Below are positions 10,827 to 53,800 of a DNA stretch of 64,000 bases, piece after piece. Each line of letters opens with the position of its first letter. The stretch's first letter is position 1. Below the pieces are notes generated by a model. It was not told the origin of the DNA. It did no database searches and saw only the letters and a list, made by a program, of their open reading frames with translations. The DNA comes from Vitrella brassicaformis CCMP3155 (lineage: Eukaryota; Protista; Chromerida), in contig CDMY01000385.1 of NCBI GenBank assembly GCA_001179505.1, forward strand, positions 62,001-126,000, given 5' to 3'. A program made the translations under genes and the position numbers.

Positions 10827-10960
10827 ATCCCTTTCTGCAGGGAATGCTTACGTGTCTGTGTTCATCGTGGATGCGAGGGTCCACGATGAACACAGACACG
10901 TAAGCATTCCCTGCCCCTCGCAACATGACAGATTACGGCACGCAACATCCCTTTCTGCAG
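10827..10960. repeat. 14-bp direct repeat atccctttctgcag flanking the hairpin (possible target-site duplication)
   Basis: Copies at 10827-10840 and 10947-10960; a partial third copy catccctttc(ag) at 10975-10986. Confidence 0.8.
10837..10914. repeat. Perfect inverted repeat: 35-bp stem with 8-nt loop (78-nt hairpin)
   Basis: 10837-10871 gcagggaatgcttacgtgtctgtgttcatcgtgga is the exact reverse complement of 10880-10914; the loop is tgcgaggg. Confidence 0.95.
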
Positions 10961-21440: not shown

Positions 21441-23371
21441 CTAGTCGGGGCCTTCACGTCTGTCGCTGCTGACCGTACGTAATCGGTGGGTGACGCCCAG
21501 CTCAGCAGCCATGGGCGACCTGATGCTCGATTTGATGAACTGCTGGTCGTCCCCCACTATCTGCCTGTAACTCAGCACGACGTCATCATTGCCGTCCAGC
21601 CGCCAATCCACCTCCCCGTTGATCTCTTTCTCAAACTTGTGCTGGTTGAACCTGCAGGCAGGCAACACCACACAGCACAGCACAGCCAGGGGGTTGGGTC
21701 CACGGATCAATCAGCGCGCGTGTGCGCCATTCATATGCATGAATTCTCTTGCTAACCAGAATATGGCCCTTATCAGGTGATGGTCTTGCGACCAGCCGTA
21801 GACCTGCCGCATCCACGCAGTCTTGATGGCCGCCTGAATGCAATGCAGCCAGCCACAAATCAAATCAGGCCAAGTTAGCAAGGGAGGGCAACGGTGCCCC
21901 CACGCACCTCTGAGGCGCCCAGGCGATCGGTATTGAACAGTGCCGCCGTTTCGGATATCATCATGGGTTTGTTGAGCCTTTGCGTGACGTTGGCATAGAA
22001 GGTGAGGACTGCGTCGCGGAACATGCGTGTCTTGGGCAGGGTGTTGTAGCCCGGCGCGCACACTCCGTCCGGCTCCTCACACCCCCAGTAATACACACTG
22101 GGGGGGGAGATGGGATGGATCCGATCGATCCGCCCACACATACCATACACACGTCGGTTTGTGAGATTTGGCGAATCGTTGTCTCGGTCACGTGTGTGTG
22201 TGTGTGTGTGAGTCAAAGTCACCAGTCACCTCACCTCATGCCGACCCAGTCGACCAGGTCTTGGTCTGGCAAGAATTGCCAGAATGCGTCATCCACAATG
22301 TCCCCATCTTGGTCGATGGAGGCATTGTAGTAGGGACCCTCGGGCCATGGAAAACCCCACCTGAATGAAATGAACCAAACAAACAGAGATGGATGAATGG
22401 ACAGCAAACCGGCCGTCCCGTCCCCCTCCTGACTTACTCTAGGTTAGGGGTCCACACCATCGCCACGTGGCTCGTTCGGTTCTTCATGATTCGAGCGAAC
22501 TCGTTGAACTTTGCAATGTACAGATCCGGTTGCTGGCCCCTGCAGGCACGACAAGGTAACAGGACGGCCACCTCAGCCTGTGCGTCCGCGGTCGATTGAG
22601 CCGGTACTACCGACTCACTCACTCACCATGGGTACCAGCTGCCGTTCATTTCGTGGTTATAGCGGATGAATATGGGCACGGTGTCGTTCCACTTGTTCAG
22701 GAAATCGGCCAGGTACTCGACGTGCTTGGCGGTGTAATTGTTGAGCCCTGTGGCCCGCACCGCAGCATGTCCCACACACACACACACACACACACGCAGA
22801 GCCGTTTGCAGAGGTTTGTGTCTGTGGGCTGGCTGGGCTGTGCGTACCGCCCATGGTTTCCAGTGTCAGTGCCGCCATGGCGCCATTCTCCCGACACTCC
22901 TCGAGGAAGAGATGGGCCTTCGCCCTCTCTGTCCAATTGACCACGATGTTGGGGAACGGAACAAACCGGAGGAAAGCTGCGTGCCTGAGAGTGAGCGAGT
23001 GCAGTGCACCACACAGCGGATTTTGGATACACACGTGTGTGTGTGTGTGTGTGTGTGCAGGGCCGGACGGGTGGCTCGCTCACTCAATTCGTGTGTGGGC
23101 GTTGAAACTGGCCAGGCTCTCGTTTGCCTGCAAGGCGAGAGCCAACACACAAGCAACAGTGAGCAAGAGAGCAGGGGCCTGGACTGGCTTCTGCGTCGAA
23201 GAGGCTGACCGGGAGGATGGCGCCCAGAATGATGCCGTTGCGGGAGCGGGAGGGTAGTGTGCCACCGTGGGGGGGTCCAATCCGTCCCATGGTCTGACTC
23301 CAGAAGCCCTCCAGAAACAAGGAGAAAAGGACAAGCAAGCTGAGGGGATTCTGGCGTAGGGGCATCCTCAT
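21441..23371 (-). CDS. Secreted glycoside hydrolase family 26 (beta-mannanase / beta-glucanase / xylanase-type)
   Basis: Signal-peptide-like N-terminus MRMPLRQNPLSLLVLFSLFLEGFWS. Spliced ORF contains the acid/base motif FIRYNHEMNGSWYPW, then AMVWTPN, DLVDWVGMSVY, nucleophile motif KPMMISETAA and RAIFWFNQHK. TAG at 21441. Confidence 0.9.
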
Positions 23372-23788
23372 CAAGGCGTCGCAGCTGAGTCACAGCACCG
23401 CGTTGTCTTTATTATGTGTGCGCTTCGATGGCAATGCGATGGCTCGCTTGCTTCCAACGGCTTTACACAGTGTTCACTTGGCCAGGATGTATGAGTATCA
23501 CTCAGTGTTCATCTGATGTCATTCATTGGCTGAGAAGAGACTGACGCAGGCAATGCCAACATGAAAGCACCCATCATGAGCGCGCGAAAGAACAGACACC
23601 ATCCCCCCTGGAAGTACATACATGCCGCGGACCAAACGCATCAAGACATCAAGAGCTGAGCTCCGTATACACAGATGAGGGAAGTGCTGCCGCAACCAAG
23701 ACAGAACCAGAGACAAACGCACGGAGAAAACAACACCTCTTCCTTTCCCTCTCCCTTCCCTTGCAACCCGAGAAGCCTACACCCGCCA

Positions 23789-25385
23789 CTACGTCTGCTC
23801 GAGGTTCTCCTCCTCCCCATCACCACCTACAATGCCATCCATGTAGGCAATGACCTCGTCGATCGACGCCCTCCGCCTCTTATTGGGCACGCACATCTTG
23901 TCCCACAGCGCCCTGGCCACCGCCATGTCCACCCTCTCCTCATCCGTCAGCCCACCCACACCCTCGATCCTGTCCAGCAGGTCCAGCAGCCGCTGGTGGC
24001 GCTCGCGCGCCTCGCGGTCACAGGTCTGCAGAAAGCGCTCACGGGAGTACTTGCCCGTCGCCTTGTCGCCCCATTGCTCCGGGATGGTCACAAAGATGTC
24101 CGCCAGCTCGTTGCCCTCCTTCTCCTGACCCGCCTGGAGGGCAGACATGTCCTCCCGCAGGGCAGACAGACCGGCCAGAGCGAGAAACAACACACCTACT
24201 GCGGCGGCATAGGTGTCGCGCGACTGAGGGGAGACAATCCACGCACACAGAGAGAGAAACGATGACAGCAGGATGGATGCCTGCTGGGGTCATCTTGTCT
24301 GCACCTGGTCATCCGGCGAGCCCATCATGCCCCAGTCGCTTTCGGCGATCTCCCTGAAGGCCTCAGGCGGCAAACACTGGATGGGCGGGATCGTCCGCGG
24401 CGCCGACCGGAAGTTGCCCCCACCCACCAGCACCTGAACGCTCTGATAGTCGATGATTCGCGGCCTCAGCAGCGAATCGTACACAAAGTTGTTGTCGTTC
24501 ATGTCGTTGTGGATCAGCAGACGGAAGCCAGCGACAGAGCTATCCTTCTCCCTGATGTACGGTGGCGACGAGCATGTGGCGGAGGGCGGGAGGAACTTGT
24601 GAGTAGGGTGGATGTTGCAGCCCGAGCTGGAGGGCGACTTGACCCCGTCGTGTGTCGCGTGGAAGGCTTTGGTGGCCGCCAGGGTGTCGCGGATCACCTG
24701 CCGATATCGGGCGGGCGAGAGGGCCGATGGGCCGCCGGCTGCTCGAGCAGCCGTGAGGCCGTGGAGAGTGGCCCCTGTCTGGCCCTCCGGCGAGCCTGCA
24801 ACACACAGCCAACACAGTGGAGCATTTCTGTGCTCGGTGTTTCGTGTCCCATCCTTCCTTACGTATGTGCTCCAGCAGCAGAAATGGCCCGCCCAACTCG
24901 ATGTCATCCAACCCATTCGCCTCCTCGCCGTCACTGTTGAGACCTCCCCCCTTCAGCAGCCGCAGTGCGAAGGGCAGGCCGCTATCTCGGCGATCGCCCG
25001 CTGCCCCACTGTCGGCTTCTGCGGTTGCTTTGCGCTTCTCGCGTCGCGTGAGGAGCAGGCGGCCCCTCTCATAAAGCACAGGTCCGATGGGGCAACCGTT
25101 GTTCTCCGTGGTGAAGCGGAAAAGTAGCTCCCCCTCGTCCTCGAGCTCCTGAGTCAGCACCTCCTTTGTGCAGCAGTTGTGGGGGTCTTCCTGGAGGGAG
25201 GCGGGGGTGAGGGTTTTGAGCAGGACGTCGGCTGGTCCTTTGCTGGTGTCGATGGTGCCCTCGATGTAGATGAACTCGTCATTTTTGTGCACGTAGCGGC
25301 CGGAGCACCGCAGCGTGTCTAGAAGAGGGTAGGGCGTGCTGCTCCATGAAGGCTGGGGAGGCTGGAAGTGTGTGTGCGGGGCCAT
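23789..25385 (-). CDS. Divergent protein kinase-fold protein (non-RD, atypical loops), 3 coding exons
   Basis: Subdomain II VLLK, III KEV, hinge LLLEHI, catalytic loop LIHNDMNDNNF (HxDxxxxN), IIDYQ in place of DFG, LPPE, SRDTYAAAV (IX) and NKRRRAS (XI). Introns are phase-consistent. TAG at 23789. Confidence 0.75.
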
Positions 25386-25460
25386 ACCGTCAGTTGCCTG
25401 GAATGAGTGGAAAGAAAGCACCTCGTTTCATCCATCCTGCGTCCACATAGTAGGGGTTTC

Positions 25461-25482
25461 ATGCAGGGTTCGAACCCTGCAT
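25461..25482. promoter_or_regulatory. Perfect 22-bp palindrome ATGCAGGGTTCGAACCCTGCAT containing a Pol III B-box consensus match (GGTTCGANNCC)
   Basis: Read directly; lies between the divergent kinase and CWF19L2 starts. Function is not shown. Confidence 0.6.
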
Positions 25483-25601
25483 TCCAAACCCTGCACTTAC
25501 TGGAGGAACCACACATGTTTGCGGGAGTCAAAGTCGTGGTGAGAGTCAGCAGGAGGCAGTGAGAAGTGTCTTGGATCTCTTACCGTCTTCTTGCTTGTGT
25601 T
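25470..25601 (-). repeat. Copy A of a duplicated 5'-end module (inverted relative to copy B at 50732-50881)
   Basis: Reverse complement of 25601-25508 matches 50732-50825 at 90/94 nt (first 57 nt identical). Reverse complement of 25504-25470 matches 50847-50881 at 32/35 nt. There is a net 18-nt indel between the two blocks. Confidence 0.97.
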
Positions 25602-28600
25602 GTCAGAGCCAAGATGGCGACGGGCGGCGGAAGAAGTCCAAGAAGGACAAGAAGTCCAAGAAGAGCCGCAGACGGGATGACGATGCGTCAGACTCATCAG
25701 GAGATGACGCTGCTCTCGCTGCAGCTCCCGATGTAGACGCCAAGGTACGAAGCACTCGATGAGTGAGGAATGATCAACCCAGTGAGTGGCTTCTGGTGCG
25801 GGTGCTGCTGTGCTTCATGCAGGATGGCGATTCGCGAGGCGCACGGGACGACTGGATGCTCTCGAACAAGGAGGTGAGGGAGCCAGATGACGGCACTCGA
25901 CCATCGATTGGTTGCTGATACATACATGGCTCGGTGTGCTGGCTATCAGGATGGCGATGCGTGGCTTGATTCGTTGGGCAGTGAGGTCAAGAAACCAGAC
26001 ATACTCGAGGAGAAGAGGAAACAGCAGGAAGCGGTAGGGACGATAGATAAACACACACACACACACACAGTCCCACACAGTCACACCAGTCTGGCTGGTG
26101 GTGGATGGACTTGTGCTTATCTGCAGGCTGAGAAGGCCATCCATCCCCTGGAGCTCAACCCGTACCTTCGCAAGCCACCAGAAGGTGACCGACCACACGC
26201 GGCCGTCTCTCTGACCACACCGAAGAGTTCGAAACTCTCTGCCATTTGACGTGTCATCAGGTGGCGAGAGGCCAGGCGAGACTCCCGAATCAGACGGCCC
26301 CTCGTCTGGCGCCGGCAACGTCCCCGCACACCTGTGTGTGGGCGACGGCGGACGCAGGTGGCGAAACAGAGCCATCAGGCGCGCTAAGGAACAGGTATGT
26401 TGCCGGCCGACTACACGTGCCTGTTGAAGGGCTTCCTGTCAGTCTTTCCTGTCGTTTCTCATGCGTCAGGCTGAGGCCACTGGTGCCTCTGTGGATGAGG
26501 TCGTGGGCGAGCATTTCGGGGAGGGCTTCCGCGAGCGTGACAGGCGTGACGACAGGGGCGGGGACGACAGGGGCAGGGACCACAGGGGGAGGGGTGACAG
26601 GGGGTGGGAGAGGAGGAGGGATCGCAACAGGGACTGGGAGGACCGCAGAGATCGCAGAGACGACGATCGCGACTGGAGAGAACGGAGGAGAGACCAGGGT
26701 GGGCTGACACGCGCTGGGAGAGTGCACCCATCATAGACACACATGCACACCTGTATGGCCTGTTTATTGTCCGTGCAGATTCGTCTGATCGGAGGGAGCG
26801 TCGCGGGCAGGGCTGGCGGAGGTCGCAGGACGACAGGCGGGAGACCGACGGCCCCAGCAGCGACAGACCCCCGCCCCCCTCCAACGGCCAGCCAGCCCCC
26901 ATGGATGTCGACGAGTCCCCGATGGACCATTTCACCGCCCTTAAGGCGAGATACACGCCTGCCGCGCAAGAAGCGCAGCCGTCACAAGACGACCAGCAGC
27001 CAGAGACCTCTGAGAAGCCCAGAGGCGAGGAGGAGGGGGGCGCGGCGGACTACTCGAGCATGAATGCAAACGAGCTGTCTTCGCTAGCGATGAAGGCCAT
27101 GTTGGCGGGCAACATGGACGAGTACCACCGGCTGAACGCGGCGCTCAAGCTGAAACAGACCAGCGACCACCTCAAGCCGAAGGCCCCCACCCCTGAGCAG
27201 CCGTCCGGTGCACGTGCCGGCGCCAGTGCTGGCGGTGCTGGTCAGCGCGTCGAGGTCATCGAGGAAGTGGACAGTGCCGGTGAGAGAGGACGTGCACAGC
27301 ACAGACGGTGTGCGACGAGCGGTCCCTATGTATGTTTGTGTCGTGGTGTCAGGTCGCATGCGGACAATGGTGTCATCCGTGGCTCAGTCTTCCGCCCTGG
27401 CCAAGGGCAAGAAACGCCTCACACACGAAGAGGGAAAGAGGTAAGCGCCCCACCGACACACCACGCAGTACCAAACGCGCCTATCGCTGCACCATCGTCA
27501 ATTGTGTCTGTGTGTTTCCGTTCCAGCTACTATGCGGATGATGCGGTGTCGCTGGAGCAGCTGCTGCGCCGCGAGAAGGTGGAGGGCGTGCAGGACTATG
27601 ACGCCAACTACGCGGGATACATTGTCAGAAAGTAAGACAGCCCGGTCACAATCAACGCAGGAGGGGGGCCCGCCATTGATCCGCGTCTGTGGGTGTTGCC
27701 TGTCTGTCGTAGGGGCAAGCGCTTCAAGGAGCTCCATGAGGATGAGGACGAGAGCTATGCTTTGGGGCGATATGAGTCGCGGGAAAAGGTGGCCGACCCG
27801 CGCAAGAAGGCACACAAGGAGCGGCAGAGGCTCGTACGAGACAAACAACGGCTGCAAAAGAAGAGGTTAGCCGACCTTCTCGCACACGTGCACCCATCGT
27901 GTGCACTGCATGGTTTGTCTGTTGTGCGTGTGGTGATGCAGTGCGGATTGCTCGTTCTGCATGGAAAGCGACAAGTTCGCTGGGCGTCTCGACTGCCTCA
28001 TATCGCAGTCGTTCAAGGTGTATCTGTGCTTCCAGTCCTTCAGCCAGGCCTCCTTCGACCCCCACCTCTTCATCGCACCCATCCCCCACGTCGGCAGCGT
28101 CACCAACCTGGACGAGGACGTCTACGACGAGCTGCGCAACTACCAGAAGTGCCTGGTGCGCTACTTCGACGCCCGCAACCAGGCGCCCATCTTCATCGAG
28201 ACGGTGCGGTTCTTCGTCTCGCCCGAGAAGGCCATGATGGGCGGCGGGCCGCACACCATTGTGGAGGTGGTTGCCGTGCCGGCCGACAGGCTGCAGGAGG
28301 CCAAGACCTACTTCAGCAAGGCCTTCGGCGAGAGCGGGTCCGAGTGGTCGCAGAACAAGAAGATCGTGCCGACGAGCGGCAAGACCGGAGTGAGGGGTCG
28401 CATACCGAAGAACTTCCCCTACGTCCACGTCGACTTCTCGCTGAGTGAGGAGGACTGAGACCTACTAGTGTGCTGGGAGGTGAATGAAATCGGTGTCTGT
28501 GTATGTGTCAGCTGAGGGCCTGGGCCACGTCATTGAGGATACCGAGGAGTTCCCCAGGTATGTGAGTCGGAAGCCACCCGGCATACGAGCGGATGGCACA

Positions 28601-47500: not shown

Positions 47501-50500
47501 ACGTACGTAAAGCACTCACTCTTACACATAGTCAGACGCCTGGATACCTGCCTCCCCGCCTGCCCGCCCGATCAAACTGTGGTCGTCAGTTTTTCTCTGC
47601 TTTGCAATGCGCTGCCTGGGGTAGCACAACACAGAGAACAGCATGCTCTCAAGCTTCCAGTTGACTCTGTGTGTGTCTGTCTCCTTTCTATGTATGTATT
47701 TTTCGAGGTGGCTGGCGAACTTGGTGGCTGCGTTCATTCGTCTCTTCTCTCCTTCTCTGGCTGGCTGGCTGTCTGGCTGTTCGGGCGCTGCGGGTCTGTG
47801 GGTCACGTCACACACAGGGAGGGGAGGGGAGAGAAGGTCCGGTCCCTTGGTCGATCGGCTGCTTGGCGGGCGGGCGGGCGGGCAGGCAGGTTGTATAGGC
47901 ATTCACACATTCGTATTCGTTATATATTCGTTTGTCCGTTTTCTTTGATTGTTTGTGGGGTCGATCGATCGGTCGATGTGTATGTGTGGATGTATATACA
48001 TGTGTGTGTATCACTCACTCACTCTCTCTCTCTCTGCGGCTGGTCGGTCGGTCGGTCGGTCGGTCGGGCACTCATCCACTTCCTCTCACTTACTTGCCTC
48101 GCTCTCCTCTCTATCCGTCTGTGTGTCGTGTTGTGTTGTGTTGTGTTGTGCTGCACAGTGCTGGGTGACACGGTGTATACTAGGTAGCTCTCTGCCTGTC
48201 CTCTCTCCCTTGGTCCTGCCAAGACGTGCCCTCTCTCACTCGCCGTGCCTCACGATGGATGGATGGATGGATGGAGTTTCATTGTCGATTGGCTGGTTGG
48301 CTGGCTGTTTGCTCTCCTCGTGCTATGTGGGTGTTGGTTCGGTGGGTCAGTCAACAGGTGTGTGTTCGGTTGGTCGGTCGGTCGTACTTTCTTGTGTGTC
48401 TTGTCGATGGATGGATGGATGGATCGGCTGAGTGAGCTGCTTTTAACATTTAAGGCCGGCACGTGTGCAATGGCATGGGTGCTGCAGTGTGTGCTGTGCG
48501 TACCTTGTCTGTGAGCCTGTCTGTCTGTCTGTCTGTCTGCAAAGGGCCTTTTTGAAACCAACACCAGCAAGGAAGTCAAGTCGATCGATCGATCGACAGC
48601 CATCCCCCGCCTCCCACCCACCCCCTCACTCACTAGACCCCCCCGATTCATACATAGCCTGCCTGCTGTGTGTATGTATATATATCCGCCTGCTGTGTGT
48701 GTGCGTCCGAGACGAATGGATGGTATGGATGATCATGGTATGGTATACACGTGTGACAGCCAGCACTGTGTGATGCACCCATCTTTTTGCGTACGTACAC
48801 AGTGGATCGATGCATCGCCTGTGTGTGTGTCTGTGTGTGGTGTTTTTCCCCTGCTCCATCTGAGTCTCTCTCTTTCTTGCCGCCCGCCTACGGCGTGCGT
48901 GGGTGGGTGCGTGCGTCTCACTGCATTGCGGCTCTGGAGAGAGCCTAGGGCATGCTCGTAAGCCGTTATCACGACCGACCGACCGACCGACAGACAGCCA
49001 AGCCGAAGGCCCGACCGACCGCTTTTATTGATGTGCGTACGTCACATGCGTATGGATGTGCTGTGTGTGTGTGTGTTGGTGAGAGAGTGCATGGCGTGAG
49101 GTGAGCAGTCAGTCGTGTATGGGCAGTCAGTCAGTCCGTCCTGCTGTGATGCGATGCGATGTGTGTCCCAGTCAGCGAGTGTGACCTTTTTTGTGTGTAT
49201 GTCCGTCCATCTGTCTGTCTGTCTGTCTACGCGTACCAGCTGAGGCCAACCCATTTATCTACAGCCAGCGACAAACGAGGGAGGGAGGGAGGGAGGGAGT
49301 AAGGGAGTAAGGGTGCGTGTTGTCCACCGGAGGGCATTGCACACACAATGGCAAAGATACAGATTTTGATTATGCATGCGTACCGAGGCGAGGAGAGTGC
49401 AGTGCCCCCCTTTTTTGTTCCATGCTCACCCCACCCACGCAACGCACCGCACCCCCTATACACACCTGCGATGCATTCCTTCATTTCTTCGTTCGTTGTG
49501 CTGGCTGGTGTGTGCATGTACGTATGCATCCATCCATCCATCCACCAACCTCATCCCACCTACCATACGCACCCGCATCTCTCTCTCTGTTGCCTCTCTC
49601 TACCTCCCTCTCTCTAACCTTGATCCCTCCCGGCCAGCTGACGCGCCTGGGTTGGTTTTCCCTCTGCCTTGCCTTGCTTGAGTATTCCATTCATTCCTTA
49701 ATTCGGCCGTCGTTGCGTACTTGTGTCTCGCTCGGCTTCCTCATTCGCGCGCGACGCACAACGTGTCAGCCACGCCCTCGGTCAACCAGTCAGACGGACA
49801 GGCAGACAGCAGGACAGACAGCGACAAGACAGCCAACACATTTAGTAAGAGTGAGCGACTGACCGGAACGAAGGAAGGAGCACATGCACATAAGTACGTG
49901 CACATAGACGAGGCCAGCGCGACGGGACGACGGCCGCACTGCTTACATCCGATACTTACCTGCTGCTTACTTGCTATACTCTCTCGTGGGCGTGGGGTGG
50001 CCGGCGACGGTTTTGCCTGAATCGATCACAGCCAGCCGCATGCACCCATGCTTATCCATGCTTATCGATCCATCGTTCCCGAAGAACATACATGTGTGCG
50101 TGTATACTTGTCCTGTGCGTCGCTCCTTTTATATATGTGGCTCCCTCTATCTGCCGCAGGGTGCTTCGCTTCGGAGACGCGTCGGTCGGTGCAGTGTGTG
50201 CGTGTCGTGTCCATCTGTCTATCTGTCTGCATTAATTGCTGTACGTTACTTACACGTGTGTCGTGTCGTGTCGTGTGGTGTTGTGTTGTGTGAGTACATC
50301 TGTCTGTCTGTGTATGATGTGGGTACTTACTCGCTGACCCGACAGCCGACTTGCACCTTGCTTGCTTGTAATTAACTAGGCACCTTCTTACTTGCCTGTT
50401 GCCATGTCTGCATGTGTGTATGTGTGGCTTGCCTTCCTCCCTATCTCTGTCTGTCTCCGTCTCCTCCCTCCTGCGCGTCAAGATGCGACAACACATGATG

Positions 50501-50700
50501 ATGCACTCATGCGGTGGATGGATATGGCATGGAGAGACATATGATGTCCGGACGCCGGCTGTGCGCGTAACTGCGTCACATCCACCTGTGTACGTGGATG
50601 GGATGATCACTCTGTGAAAGCTATTTATGAGCAGAGGAAAAATTACAAGATGGGGGCCTTAAGAAGGACCATGGATGACCAGATCGTGTGAATATTGACA
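44600..50700. repeat. About 6-kb microsatellite-rich interval ((GT)n, (CTGT)n, (GGAT)n, (GGCT)n, (GGGA)n, (GTCG)n)
   Basis: Read directly; no recognisable coding sequence. Confidence 0.65.
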
Positions 50701-50731
50701 TCAGACAAATACATGCACACTGCAGGGTCCG

Positions 50732-50818
50732 AACACAAGCAAGAAGACGGTAAGAGATCCAAGACACTTCTCACTGCCTCCTGCTGACACTCACCGCGAC
50801 TTTGACTCCCGCAAACAC
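50732..50818 (-). pseudogene. Defunct copy of CWF19L2 exon 1 and most of intron 1
   Basis: Minus strand reads GTG TTT GCG GGA GTC AAA GTC GCG|gtgagt (start ATG changed to GTG; FAGVKVA). It is followed by 63 of the 68 intron-1 nucleotides, truncated 5 nt before the acceptor, with no exon 2 downstream. Confidence 0.85.
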
Positions 50819-50881
50819 GTGCGGTGTCAGATGGGCGAGGAGCTCATCCAGTAAGTGCAGGGTTTCGAGAGCAGGGTTCGA
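50732..50881 (+). repeat. Copy B of the duplicated 5'-end module
   Basis: See copy A: 90/94 and 32/35 identity to the reverse complement of 25601-25470. Confidence 0.97.
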
Positions 50882-53800
50882 GTGCATGCAGGGTTCGGTT
50901 CGGAAAAACCCTGCAGACGTGGACACTTTTGCTCCGGGAGGCCGAGCACGGCCCTCCATAGGCTGCCAGACAGTTGGGGTCGAACAGAGGTGCTCAAGGG
51001 AAAAGTTGCATGCAAAGACGGGGGGCGACTGGGGGCTTTGAGCGAGCTTCTTCATCGAGCGTGTCGCTGGGAGTTCCTCAATTGATGGTGGACTCACCGG
51101 CTGACCAAAATTCACCTGTTGCCATCGCTCACGAGCCACGCGACTGCGCCAATCGCGATTGACCGCACTGCAGGATGAGTACGCTTAGCACCGGGCCCGT
51201 TAATGGGCCTCTCCGACAGCGAGGCGTCTATTCGGAGGTGCTGGGACAGAAAAACATCGACACAGTCCAGGTACATGGCACAAATGCGCCAGCAATGACA
51301 CACACAGGCAACAGGAATGACAGACAGGGCCGCGCCAGTGATCAATGCTGTTCCTGTACTTATGCATTGCCATCTCTGCATTGCCGTTGCAACACACACA
51401 CCTTTGCTATGTGCTGCACGTGTGTGCGTGTGTGCGCAGAAGTCCGTCCGCGGCCCCACCCAAGAGCGGGATGTGTCGGGCGGCATCATCGAGATTGCCC
51501 CTCCCCGCGCCGCCACGTTCGTGCCCAAGGAGACTCCCGGTGCCACATCTGCCATGGCCCGCCCTCCCCCCACGAGCAAGGCCAGAGTTGACCCCAAGGT
51601 CATCGAGCCATACGTGCAGGTGCCCGGCAAGGCGCCGCGCAAGGTGATTGTCGAGAGGCGGAAGAAGCTCTATGAATCGCTCGACATAGCGGACCTGCTG
51701 AGGGAGAGAGGGGTGGACTATGGAGACCCACAATTCGACACGAGAAGATGGTACATGTATGCTCAGATGACCCATGAATACACAGACACAGGGCAGGTGG
51801 CGTGCGCTGTTGCAGGCTTCCCCTGGAGCCGTTTGACGACACCGATTTCGACACATACACACTGGAGGAGTGGGTCCAGCAGGGCGTCAACGCACAGGGC
51901 AACTTCCTGCCGCTGCCCGCCAAGGGCCTCAGAATCGACGCCGATGGCATCGGCCTCTGGCGAGAGTGTCTCGTGTTTGGCGTGGACCCCAAGTCAAGGA
52001 AGATCGACGTCAGGTGGCACACCGACAACGTCGCAGCACAGCTTCCCAGGCTCAAATTGCTCTTTGATGTAGGGTGGGAGGGAGGGAAAGACAGAAGCAG
52101 TGTCGATTGGCATTCAACGTTGTGTGTTGGCTGGCTGGTTTCAGGCTGAGGACCCAACCCTTTTTGCTGACCGTGTTGCCAAGGCTCACCAGCTGAGGCG
52201 TTTTTCCGAGAGTCTTATTTTGTACAATTTCTATATCGATAACATGCCCACAGAGGAGATTGCTGGACTCGGTAGGCACAAACAGAGCAACCAGTGCCGG
52301 ATATCCACCCTTTCTTTGTGTGTTTCAGATGCTGATCAGGTGACTCGTTTGCTGGACAGTGCTCAGAACGTGCAGGCCGTCCGCGAGGCCCACCTCGACA
52401 CGGCCGCCTTGCTCAAGGAGGTCAACCTTGACTTCGCCAGGACCATGAATAAGATCATTTTCGAACAGCACATGTCGGAACACCCCGGTGACATCTTGTA
52501 CAAAGACCTAGAGCTCCCTCCACCCCCTGAAGCCCCACCCGTACCATGGTCAGTCTCCGCGCTTTTCTGCAAAGACACCCCTCCGTACCTCTTTCTTTGC
52601 GTATGTTAGGTTCGCTCTTGTGCCCACCCCAGCTCACAATTTCACTGACGCCTTCGCAAGTTTCTGTTTCTCCTCACTCTATATCAAGGGCGAGGTGGTC
52701 AAGGGTCTTTCGTCCATCCGGGCGGAGAATTCGGCCCTGCTCGATCACAATATCTTCACGGTCACCTTTTCCAAGGCTCTCCGTCTGGACGAGTTCAAGC
52801 AGGTTGAGCGGACGGCCATCAGCCAGATGTCGTACCACCTCAAGGAGCACTGGGTGCAGAACATCCAGCGGATCATCATCAAGCAGTTCGAGAATGTGGG
52901 CAAGGGGTGGTTCAACATGCACGAGACCAACAAGGAGACGTACGAGTACGGCAAGCTCAAGAAGTTCCTCACCGTCGTCAGGTTCATGATGCAGGACACA
53001 CTCAGGTACGCATGAGGTGAAAATTGCGCGGCGGAGTTGACACATGTTTGCTTTTGTAGGGATTTGACCATCAAGTCTCTGAAGACCTATTGCACATCGT
53101 TGAAGGGCTACGTACCCAAACTGGTCGACGTCAAGTCGGTCCATACAGTCGAGAACGAATGGAGGTGACATCGAAAAGAGACACAAGAACATGTCTCTCG
53201 ATTTGTCTGCCGTCACGATGTCTCGCCCTGTCTCTTTTCATGACATCATTCTGCTCGTATCAGTGAAGAGTTCAAGCCGCACCTCGACGGGCCCCCCGAG
53301 CGCACGGCCCTGTTCGCCATCGAGCTGACCAAGACACAGGACAATGAGGGGTTCCAGTTCAGCACTGACCCAGCACAGTTCGTCGAAGCCACACTGGAGA
53401 TCCTCGAAAAGGGGTAAGCAGCACTCGAAATTTCTCTCATATACATGTCTCCTTGCCTCTGTGTGTGTGTATCAGTTTGCAGCAGATGGGCGACATTCCG
53501 CAGCCCGAGAAGCTCATCCTGCCGCACCTGTTCAAGACGCAGCCTAAGCTGGTGCTGGCTTCAGTCAACCTCGACGAGGGCTGGGTGCAGGAGCTTCGCA
53601 CCTCGCTGGACGATAGTCTCGAGACCAGCCTTCCATACATGACCGACTACCTGCAGTGCTTCCAGCAGTACATCGACCTTCTGAAGTTGGACCCCGCTGC
53701 TCACGTCAAGGCATTGCAGGAGCAGGAGACGCCTCCTTCCAACGACGATTTCGCCAAACAGGTGCAGGAGAACCTCGACAAGGAGCAGCAGCTGTATGGC

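What the first reader, a model, noticed from the sequence alone, without database searches (positions are those of the whole stretch)
25470..25601. Duplicated gene-start module with reciprocal loss of start codons (copy A here, copy B at 50732-50881)
Seen: the reverse complement of 25601-25470 matches 50732-50881 (90/94 nt, then a net 18-nt indel, then 32/35 nt). The module carries two opposite gene starts. Copy A keeps the CWF19L2 ATG (25515), exon 1 and the whole of intron 1, but lacks the segment holding the dynein ATG. Copy B keeps the dynein ATG (50831) and its in-phase GTAAGT donor, but its CWF19L2 start reads GTG and the intron is cut 5 nt before the acceptor. Inference: one ancestral overlapping bidirectional start shared by CWF19L2 and DNAH1 (ATGs about 12 nt apart) was duplicated. 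Each copy then kept one gene and lost the other, which amounts to subfunctionalisation of a ~150-nt promoter/first-exon unit.
Basis: partly seen in the sequence, partly recalled or inferred. Interest (0 to 1): 0.9.

Follow-up and report, generated by a model that had tools for sequence, protein, structure and literature searches.

The report
Inverted copy of a gene-start region
In the alga Vitrella brassicaformis, about 150 bases holding the start of the splicing-factor gene CWF19L2 occur twice, in opposite orientation and 25 kb apart; this is a real but fairly ordinary small duplication, possibly left by a chromosomal inversion, and the dynein gene next to the second copy starts outside it.

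Summary
The repeat is real. 25508-25601 matches 50732-50825 in inverted orientation (90/94). Copy B then has 18 extra bases, followed by a 34/38 match. There are two copies in the window and no homology outside them. Independent read assemblies reach each copy from its own flank, so it is not a mis-assembly, and word depth excludes a high-copy repeat.

Copy A is the working CWF19L2 start. A cDNA contig begins at 25502 and uses ATG 25515 (MFAGVKVV), and its first intron is 25539-25606. About 18 orthologues of 150 hits start with a similar peptide, ML[SAT]G[LIV][KR].

The dynein half of the reading fails. A spliced RNA contig places the DNAH1-like first coding exon at 51058-51270, with ATG 51175. 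No RNA covers 50654-50975 in that run. Left unspliced, ATG 50831 opens only a 7-codon frame.

So one real start codon was duplicated, and it decayed to GTG in copy B.

The origin is unresolved between two models: a 25-kb staggered-break inversion (favoured) and a templated patch insertion.

First-stage notes list several similar inverted promoter copies elsewhere in this genome. Only one has been followed up.

The parts
25441..25601 (.). Copy A of the module. The core is 25470-25601; a possible extension through the hairpin reaches 25441.
   Evidence: Genomic contig L008 from run ERR558200 covers 23037-25574 at 100% identity.
25502..25538 (+). CWF19L2 exon 1, as far as the cDNA contig reaches. 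ATG at 25515, peptide MFAGVKVV.
   Evidence: cDNA contig L007 from SRR646408 encodes residues 19-770 of P0002. About 18 orthologues start ML[SAT]G[LIV][KR].
25539..25606 (+). CWF19L2 intron 1 (68 nt, GT..AG). The module holds all of it except the last 5 nt.
   Evidence: L007 joins 25538 to 25607.
25386..25500 (-). Unspliced 5' leader of the divergent gene X (P0001, 482 aa, ATG at 25385). It runs through the GTAAGT and GCAGGGTT arm of copy A.
   Evidence: cDNA contigs L002 (5' end at 25500) and L003 (5' end at 25432).
25545..25601 (.). 57-nt block identical in both copies (equals 50732-50788). It lies inside CWF19L2 intron 1, about 45-100 nt upstream of gene X's cDNA start.
   Evidence: Read-assembly contigs break exactly here.
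25461..25482 (.). Perfect palindrome (ATGCAGGGTTCGAACCCTGCAT) in copy A. It forms a 9-bp hairpin.
   Evidence: z = -3.4; motif counts.
50732..50881 (.). Copy B of the module, inverted relative to copy A. A possible extension through the hairpin reaches 50922.
   Evidence: Genomic contig L006 covers 48038-50761, and the X1 contig covers 50759-52595.
50795..50818 (-). Decayed copy of the CWF19L2 first coding exon. The start reads GTG and codon 8 has changed from GTG to GCG.
   Evidence: mismatches at 50818 and 50796. No RNA lies over it in run X6.
50826..50843 (+). 18 nt present only in copy B. It holds ATG 50831. Unspliced, the frame reads MGEELIQ and then stops at the TAA inside GTAAGT.
51058..51270 (+). 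RNA-supported first coding exon of the DNAH1-like dynein. ATG at 51175, in-frame TGA at 51160, uORF at 51085-51162. Its 5' end is not defined.
   Evidence: Spliced contig of run X6 (record 26); sequence.
51271..51439 (+). Dynein intron 1 (GT..AG). Exon 2 begins at 51440.
48038..50635 (.). Abundant unspliced RNA without a convincing reading frame. It ends about 100 nt to the left of copy B.
   Evidence: X6 contig at depth about 570, against about 21 for dynein. Composition.

Best explanation
About 130-190 bp from the 5' end of CWF19L2 exists as two inverted copies 25.1 kb apart in Vitrella brassicaformis contig CDMY01000385. The piece holds the TSS region, a 13-nt leader, the first coding exon, intron 1 minus its last 5 nt, and the adjacent GCAGGGTT/hairpin region.

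Shown:
- Copy A is the working unit. CWF19L2 mRNA starts there. The divergent gene X starts back-to-back with it, with cDNA ends at 25502 and 25500.
- Copy B lies in the untranscribed gap between an upstream RNA, which ends near 50635, and the DNAH1-like dynein. Its CWF19L2 exon is decaying.
- The dynein ATG supported by RNA is at 51175, outside the module.

Inferred:
- The module is native to CWF19L2, because it encodes that family's conserved N-terminus and is contiguous with exon 2.
- The pair is most likely the by-product of an inversion of 25602-50731 made by staggered breaks. Under that model CWF19L2 and the dynein were once head-to-head. The stretch between the two nicks was filled in on both ends, so each gene kept a copy of the shared start region. 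Gene X then acquired the dynein-side half as its new leader and promoter.
- The identical 57-nt block and the conserved hairpin may be the promoter parts still needed in both copies.
For: - Repeat anatomy.
- Organism and gene calls.
- CWF19L2 cDNA. Conserved N-terminus.
- Gene X cDNAs.
- Dynein RNA structure, and zero RNA depth over copy B.
- Dynein class (best matches Chlamydomonas DHC2 and DNAH1).
- Both copies seen in independent read assemblies that each stop 30 nt into the shared 57-mer (L006, L008, X1 and X4 contigs).
- Hairpin kept in both copies.
- Inverted duplications of 46 bp to 1.9 kb flank 59% of fixed Drosophila inversions, often from one breakpoint only: PMC1885836.
- The two copies are inverted, and the left homology boundary in copy B (50731|50732) is sharp.
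Against: - No outgroup or second arrangement was available, so the inversion itself is not shown.
- A copy-and-paste repair event would give the same picture.
- Copy B is flanked by near-identical 11-nt motifs (GCAGGGTCCGA at 50722, GCAGGGTTCGA at 50871). This fits homology-primed patch synthesis at least as well as it fits an inversion.
- The dynein TSS is not mapped. The only hint is an X10 contig starting at 50874, and that run also holds unspliced pieces.
- The 57-nt identical run is only marginally unusual (P = 0.08).
- In run X1 the shared 57-mer has depth 26.2 against 23.5 on its flanks, not the 2x expected for two copies.
Confidence: 0.5

Rival explanations
1. Templated patch insertion without any inversion. 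A break in the region upstream of the dynein was repaired by copying about 150-190 bp from the CWF19L2 start 25 kb away. Synthesis was primed at a shared GCAGGGTTCGA motif and joined at the other end by end-joining. X and CWF19L2 were always neighbours, and copy B is a neutral or co-opted insert.
For: - Motif copies lie directly left of copy B (50722-50732) and at the end of its core (50871-50881).
- No second duplicated segment exists at the other presumed breakpoint.
- The copy includes the intron, so it was made at the DNA level.
Against: - Patches this long, taken from 25 kb away, are rarer than inversion-linked duplications.
- Homology probably continues past the motif, through the hairpin, to GTGGAC. 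That weakens the motif-priming argument.
- First-stage notes list many inverted (not direct) promoter copies near their source in this genome. These are leads only.
Confidence: 0.3
2. The module holds two real, opposite start codons (CWF19L2 and DNAH1) about 12 nt apart. After duplication each copy kept one and lost the other. Dynein is translated from ATG 50831 and spliced at the GTAAGT at 50852.
For: - ATG 50831, the 21-nt frame and GTAAGT are present.
- Splicing from 50851 to 51440 would stay in frame.
- Contigs drop rare isoforms, so a minor first exon cannot be excluded.
Against: - The spliced RNA contig uses exon 51058-51270 with its own ATG 51175, preceded by an in-frame stop.
- RNA depth is zero over 50654-50975 in X6.
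- The same GTAAGT in copy A is retained unspliced in gene X's cDNA.
- By analogy with copy A's cDNA ends, ATG 50831 would lie upstream of the rightward TSS.
Confidence: 0.1
3. The module is a member of a dispersed repeat or MITE family, or one copy is an assembly artefact.
For: - The module contains short internal repeats of GCAGGGTT and a palindrome.
- The whole assembly could not be searched.
Against: - The shared 57-mer has word depth 26.2 against flanks of 23.5 in X1, and an estimated 2x in X4. That is not tens of copies.
- There are no terminal inverted repeats or target-site duplication at the module ends.
- The module encodes a conserved protein N-terminus.
- Each copy is reached from its own unique flank in separate runs.
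Confidence: 0.04

Closest known systems
Inverted duplications at inversion breakpoints (staggered-break model; Ranz et al. 2007, PMC1885836)
   Same: Two inverted copies of an otherwise unique, partly genic sequence lie 25 kb apart. The size is within the reported range of 46 bp to 1.9 kb. Duplication comes from one breakpoint only. One copy is decaying.
   Different: The inversion is not demonstrated here, because no outgroup order is available. The organism is a chromerid alga. The duplicated piece is a compact head-to-head gene-start region, not a gene body.
Promoter or leader capture by local duplication, such as the aquaporin/EMC10 case noted by this scan in the same genome (s1-080137)
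   Same: A short inverted copy of a neighbour's start region sits in front of another gene. In copy A, one arm serves as the leader of an unrelated gene, X.
   Different: Here the copy next to the dynein is not shown to contribute any transcribed sequence. The RNA-supported first exon lies downstream of it.
Templated insertions or filler DNA at double-strand-break repair sites
   Same: A short stretch was copied from a nearby locus, with a sharp junction and a possible short homology at one end.
   Different: At about 150-190 bp it is long for this class. Nothing here shows that the recipient site ever existed without the insert.
Bidirectional promoters of head-to-head gene pairs
   Same: In copy A the cDNA 5' ends of X and CWF19L2 are back-to-back (25500 and 25502). 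The coding starts are 130 nt apart.
   Different: Promoter activity was not assayed. Copy B is not shown to drive transcription in either direction.

Membership tests
Inversion-associated inverted duplication (staggered breaks) | Two copies in inverted orientation, of a sequence that is otherwise unique | tested here: met
   Word depth of the shared 57-mer is about 1-2x the flanks.
Inversion-associated inverted duplication (staggered breaks) | The segment between the copies is inverted relative to an outgroup or ancestral order | not testable with these tools
Chromera velia Cvel_5095 (P0012) is not on record with genomic context. The nearest orthologue that has context is Cardiosporidium, which is too distant and has no dynein neighbour.
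Inversion-associated inverted duplication (staggered breaks) | Each copy stays contiguous with its ancestral neighbour on one side and has a novel junction on the other | tested here: inconclusive
   Copy A is contiguous with CWF19L2 exon 2, which is necessarily ancestral. The boundary at 50731|50732 is sharp. The other two sides cannot be polarised.
Bidirectional promoter | Divergent transcripts whose 5' ends lie within about 1 kb of each other | tested here: met
   Copy A: L002 starts at 25500 (-) and L007 starts at 25502 (+). Copy B: only rightward RNA from 50874 or later in X10, and none in X6, so this is inconclusive for copy B.
MITE or dispersed repeat | Many genomic copies, with terminal inverted repeats and a target-site duplication | tested here: not met
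   Depth about 1-2x. No terminal repeats or duplication at the ends.
   The CWF19L2 function is kept in copy A and lost in copy B. A dynein function of copy B is not shown, and its proposed ATG and donor lack RNA support.
CWF19L2 (CwfJ family) gene start | CwfJ_C_1 and CwfJ_C_2 domains, and the family's N-terminal peptide at the start codon | tested here: met
   Pfam hits. MFAGVKVV compared with ML[SAT]G[LIV][KR] at residue 1 of about 18 orthologues.

The most novel reading that the evidence does not exclude
Short inverted duplications of compact head-to-head gene starts may be a recurrent by-product of staggered-break inversions in Vitrella. Breakpoints that fall in shared promoters would survive only when the promoter is duplicated, so gene partners are reshuffled and promoters are handed to unrelated genes. 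In this window the orphan gene X would have acquired the dynein-side half of an ancestral CWF19L2/DNAH1 promoter. The identical 57-nt block plus the hairpin would be the portable core.
Probability: 0.3. Interest if true: 0.55.

Novelty: new member of a known kind. Interest (0 to 1): 0.35.

Why it matters
Taken alone, this is a well-documented small duplication. It corrects two gene starts.
- CWF19L2 begins at 25515, not at the annotated 25461.
- The RNA-supported dynein ATG is 51175.

It also shows a working gene-start region copied next to another gene.

The wider value lies in the pattern. If the many similar first-stage notes in this genome hold up, Vitrella would be a good system for two questions:
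- how inversions in gene-dense genomes avoid destroying shared promoters;
- how often promoters are passed between unrelated genes.

Both can be tested with a second Vitrella or Chromera assembly and with 5'-end mapping.

Tried and rejected
- Two scans of metagenome contigs, one with an exon-1 21-mer and one with an exon-2 30-mer, found nothing.
- A word-index protein search with dynein exon 2 found nothing because of the length filter. The annotated dynein start was therefore not obtained.
- The Chromera orthologue has no genomic record in the look-up. The Cardiosporidium locus shows no dynein neighbour but is too distant to be informative.
- Rfam and tRNA scans of the window were empty. The intron block is not a known small RNA. 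The GGTTCGAACC string, which looks like a B-box, is not part of a tRNA gene.
- GCAGGGTT as a general promoter motif was rejected for this window: 7 of its 8 occurrences lie in the two copies.
- A second duplicated segment at the other presumed breakpoint was looked for and not found.
- Selection on the 57-nt identical block was tested. A run that long arises by chance with P = 0.08, which is suggestive only.
- The orientation of the upstream RNA could only be guessed from composition. Its + strand is T-rich, as known 3' UTRs and introns here are on their sense strand.

Full report
**Where this is.** A protein search with the reading frame left of copy A returned a Vitrella brassicaformis CCMP3155 protein (P0001). 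Its genomic record is CDMY01000385.1 of GCA_001179505.1, and window position plus 62000 gives the record position.

- Read as reverse complement, 25601-25508 matches 50732-50825 at 90/94.
- Copy B then has 18 extra bases (50826-50843).
- After that, 25507-25470 matches 50844-50881 at 34/38.
- A 56-nt probe hits only these two places, against 0 expected.
- A sensitive local search of both neighbourhoods finds nothing further except short hits to a GCAGGGTT motif. That motif occurs 8 times in the window, 7 of them inside or beside the two copies.
- Both copies also keep a hairpin (TGCAGGGTT, loop, AACCCTGCA) just past the core. Homology therefore probably runs with indels to about 25441 and 50922.

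**Copy A is the working CWF19L2 start.**
- The gene is confirmed by CwfJ_C_1 and CwfJ_C_2.
- The annotated protein (P0002, 770 aa) starts at 25461 and contains MFAGVKVV followed directly by exon 2.
- A cDNA contig from an independent run (L007, SRR646408) encodes exactly residues 19-770. It begins at 25502 and carries ATG 25515. It joins 25538 to 25607, so intron 1 is 25539-25606.
- Among the 150 best CwfJ-family hits, about 18 begin with ML[SAT]G[LIV][KR] at residue 1. These include Toxoplasma-group, plant-like and animal sequences. MFAGVKVV is thus the family's conserved N-terminus. The true start is 25515, and this sequence is native to CWF19L2.

- A gene X (P0001, 482 aa, no Pfam domain) lies on the other strand with its ATG at 25385.
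- Two cDNA contigs cover it. One (L002) starts at 25500 and runs unspliced through the GTAAGT and GCAGGGTT arm.
- The two divergent mRNAs therefore start back-to-back, at 25500 and 25502. In copy A the 'donor' GTAAGT is simply leader sequence.

**Copy B and the dynein.**
- The gene is a DNAH1/DHC2-type inner-arm dynein.
- Contigs of four runs were laid on 48400-53200. Runs X1 and X4 behave as DNA, with flat depth and colinear contigs. Run X6 behaves as RNA.
- The dynein contig of X6 is spliced: 51058-51270, 51440-51749, 51815-52068 and onward. The tool placed the first junction 3 nt to the left; a shared CAG allows the GT..AG reading used here.
- That first exon has ATG 51175, an in-frame TGA at 51160 and a uORF at 51085-51162.
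- X6 has zero depth over 50654-50975, which includes all of copy B.
- A contig of run X10 covers 50874-51136, but that run also holds unspliced pieces. It only hints that transcription towards the dynein may begin at the right edge of the module, which corresponds to gene X's cDNA start in copy A.
- Unspliced, ATG 50831 opens MGEELIQ and stops at the TAA within GTAAGT. Splicing from 50851 to 51440 would stay in frame, so a rare alternative first exon is not excluded. No RNA supports it.
- The CWF19L2-like exon of copy B reads GTG for ATG and GCG for codon 8. It is not covered by RNA.

**Is it an ordinary repeat or an artefact?**
- In X1 the shared 57-mer (50732-50788) is its own 57-nt contig, and the neighbouring contigs stop 30 nt into it. 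This is what a de Bruijn graph does at a sequence that has two contexts. The flank contigs of X4 stop at the same points.
- Genomic contigs fetched by exact reading frames confirm each context separately. L006 (ERR558149) covers 48038-50761, and L008 (ERR558200) covers 23037-25574.
- The 57-mer's depth is 26.2 in X1, against 23.5 on its flanks. My estimate from the X4 bin sums is about 2x.
- Either value excludes a high-copy family. The X1 value is lower than two copies should give, and I cannot explain it.
- The module has no terminal inverted repeats and no target-site duplication.

**How it arose.** Because the module encodes the conserved CWF19L2 start and is contiguous with exon 2, it belongs ancestrally with CWF19L2. 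Two histories fit.

(a) A 25.1-kb inversion of 25602-50731 with staggered breaks.
- CWF19L2 and the dynein were head-to-head. Nicks about 150-190 nt apart across their shared start region were filled in, and each end kept a copy.
- CWF19L2 moved next to X, and X took the dynein-side half as its leader.
- This mechanism is documented. 59% of fixed Drosophila inversions have such inverted duplications, sized 46 bp to 1.9 kb and often from one breakpoint only (PMC1885836).
- The idea came to me from an earlier first-stage note on this genome (s1-197160).

(b) A templated repair patch copied from the CWF19L2 start into the dynein upstream region.
- The near-identical 11-nt motifs at 50722 and 50871 that bracket the core of copy B fit this model.
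- The likely continuation of homology through the hairpin weakens that argument.

No outgroup was reachable, so I put the inversion at about 0.5 and the insertion at about 0.3.

**Possible function of what is shared.**
- The mismatches cluster in the exon and leader part. The 57-nt block is identical, but a run that long arises by chance with P = 0.08.
- The block lies about 45-100 nt upstream of gene X's cDNA start and at the matching distance from the right edge of copy B.
- It may be a proximal promoter element kept in both copies. This is inference only.

**Context in this genome.** First-stage notes list several other inverted copies of bidirectional promoters or gene starts in Vitrella. 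One was followed up and judged clear but ordinary (s1-080137). These are leads, not evidence. They suggest the class is recurrent here, and that is where any wider interest lies.

**Verdict.**
- It is a new member of a known kind.

Noticed in passing
window 48038-50635: An abundant unspliced RNA with depth about 570 in run X6, against about 21 for dynein. It has no convincing reading frame and contains many (TCTG)n-type repeats. Its + strand is T-rich (AT skew -0.25), as known 3' UTRs and introns here are on their sense strand. It may be a very long 3' UTR of the upstream MAPK-like gene, or a non-coding RNA.
   Followed up: partly
window 50732-50788: In the DNA-like run X1 the 57-mer shared by both copies has word depth 26.2 against 23.5 on its flanks, not the roughly 47 expected for two copies. 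Other short repeated contigs in the same run do show 2x or more. This is unexplained.
   Followed up: partly
window 25461-25514: The public annotation starts CWF19L2 18 codons too early, at ATG 25461. The cDNA contig begins at 25502, and the family's conserved N-terminus begins at the ATG at 25515.
   Followed up: yes
window 10837-10914: A perfect 35-nt inverted repeat with an 8-nt loop, forming a 78-nt hairpin. Its arms begin GCAGGGAA and end TTCCCTGC, which resembles the GCAGGGTT motif of the module.
   Followed up: no
window 51085-51162: A 25-codon upstream reading frame in the dynein leader. It ends 12 nt before the main ATG at 51175.
   Followed up: no
window 24500-28500 (runs X11, X14-X19): Marine sediment metagenomes from 2023-2025 hold 6-37% of the sampled words of this stretch. 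Near-identical Vitrella-like DNA therefore occurs in natural sediments, and these runs could serve as population samples for the inversion test.
   Followed up: no
window 25465-25476: The centre of the palindrome reads GGTTCGAACC. From my own knowledge this matches the RNA polymerase III B-box consensus. No tRNA gene is present in the window.
   Followed up: partly
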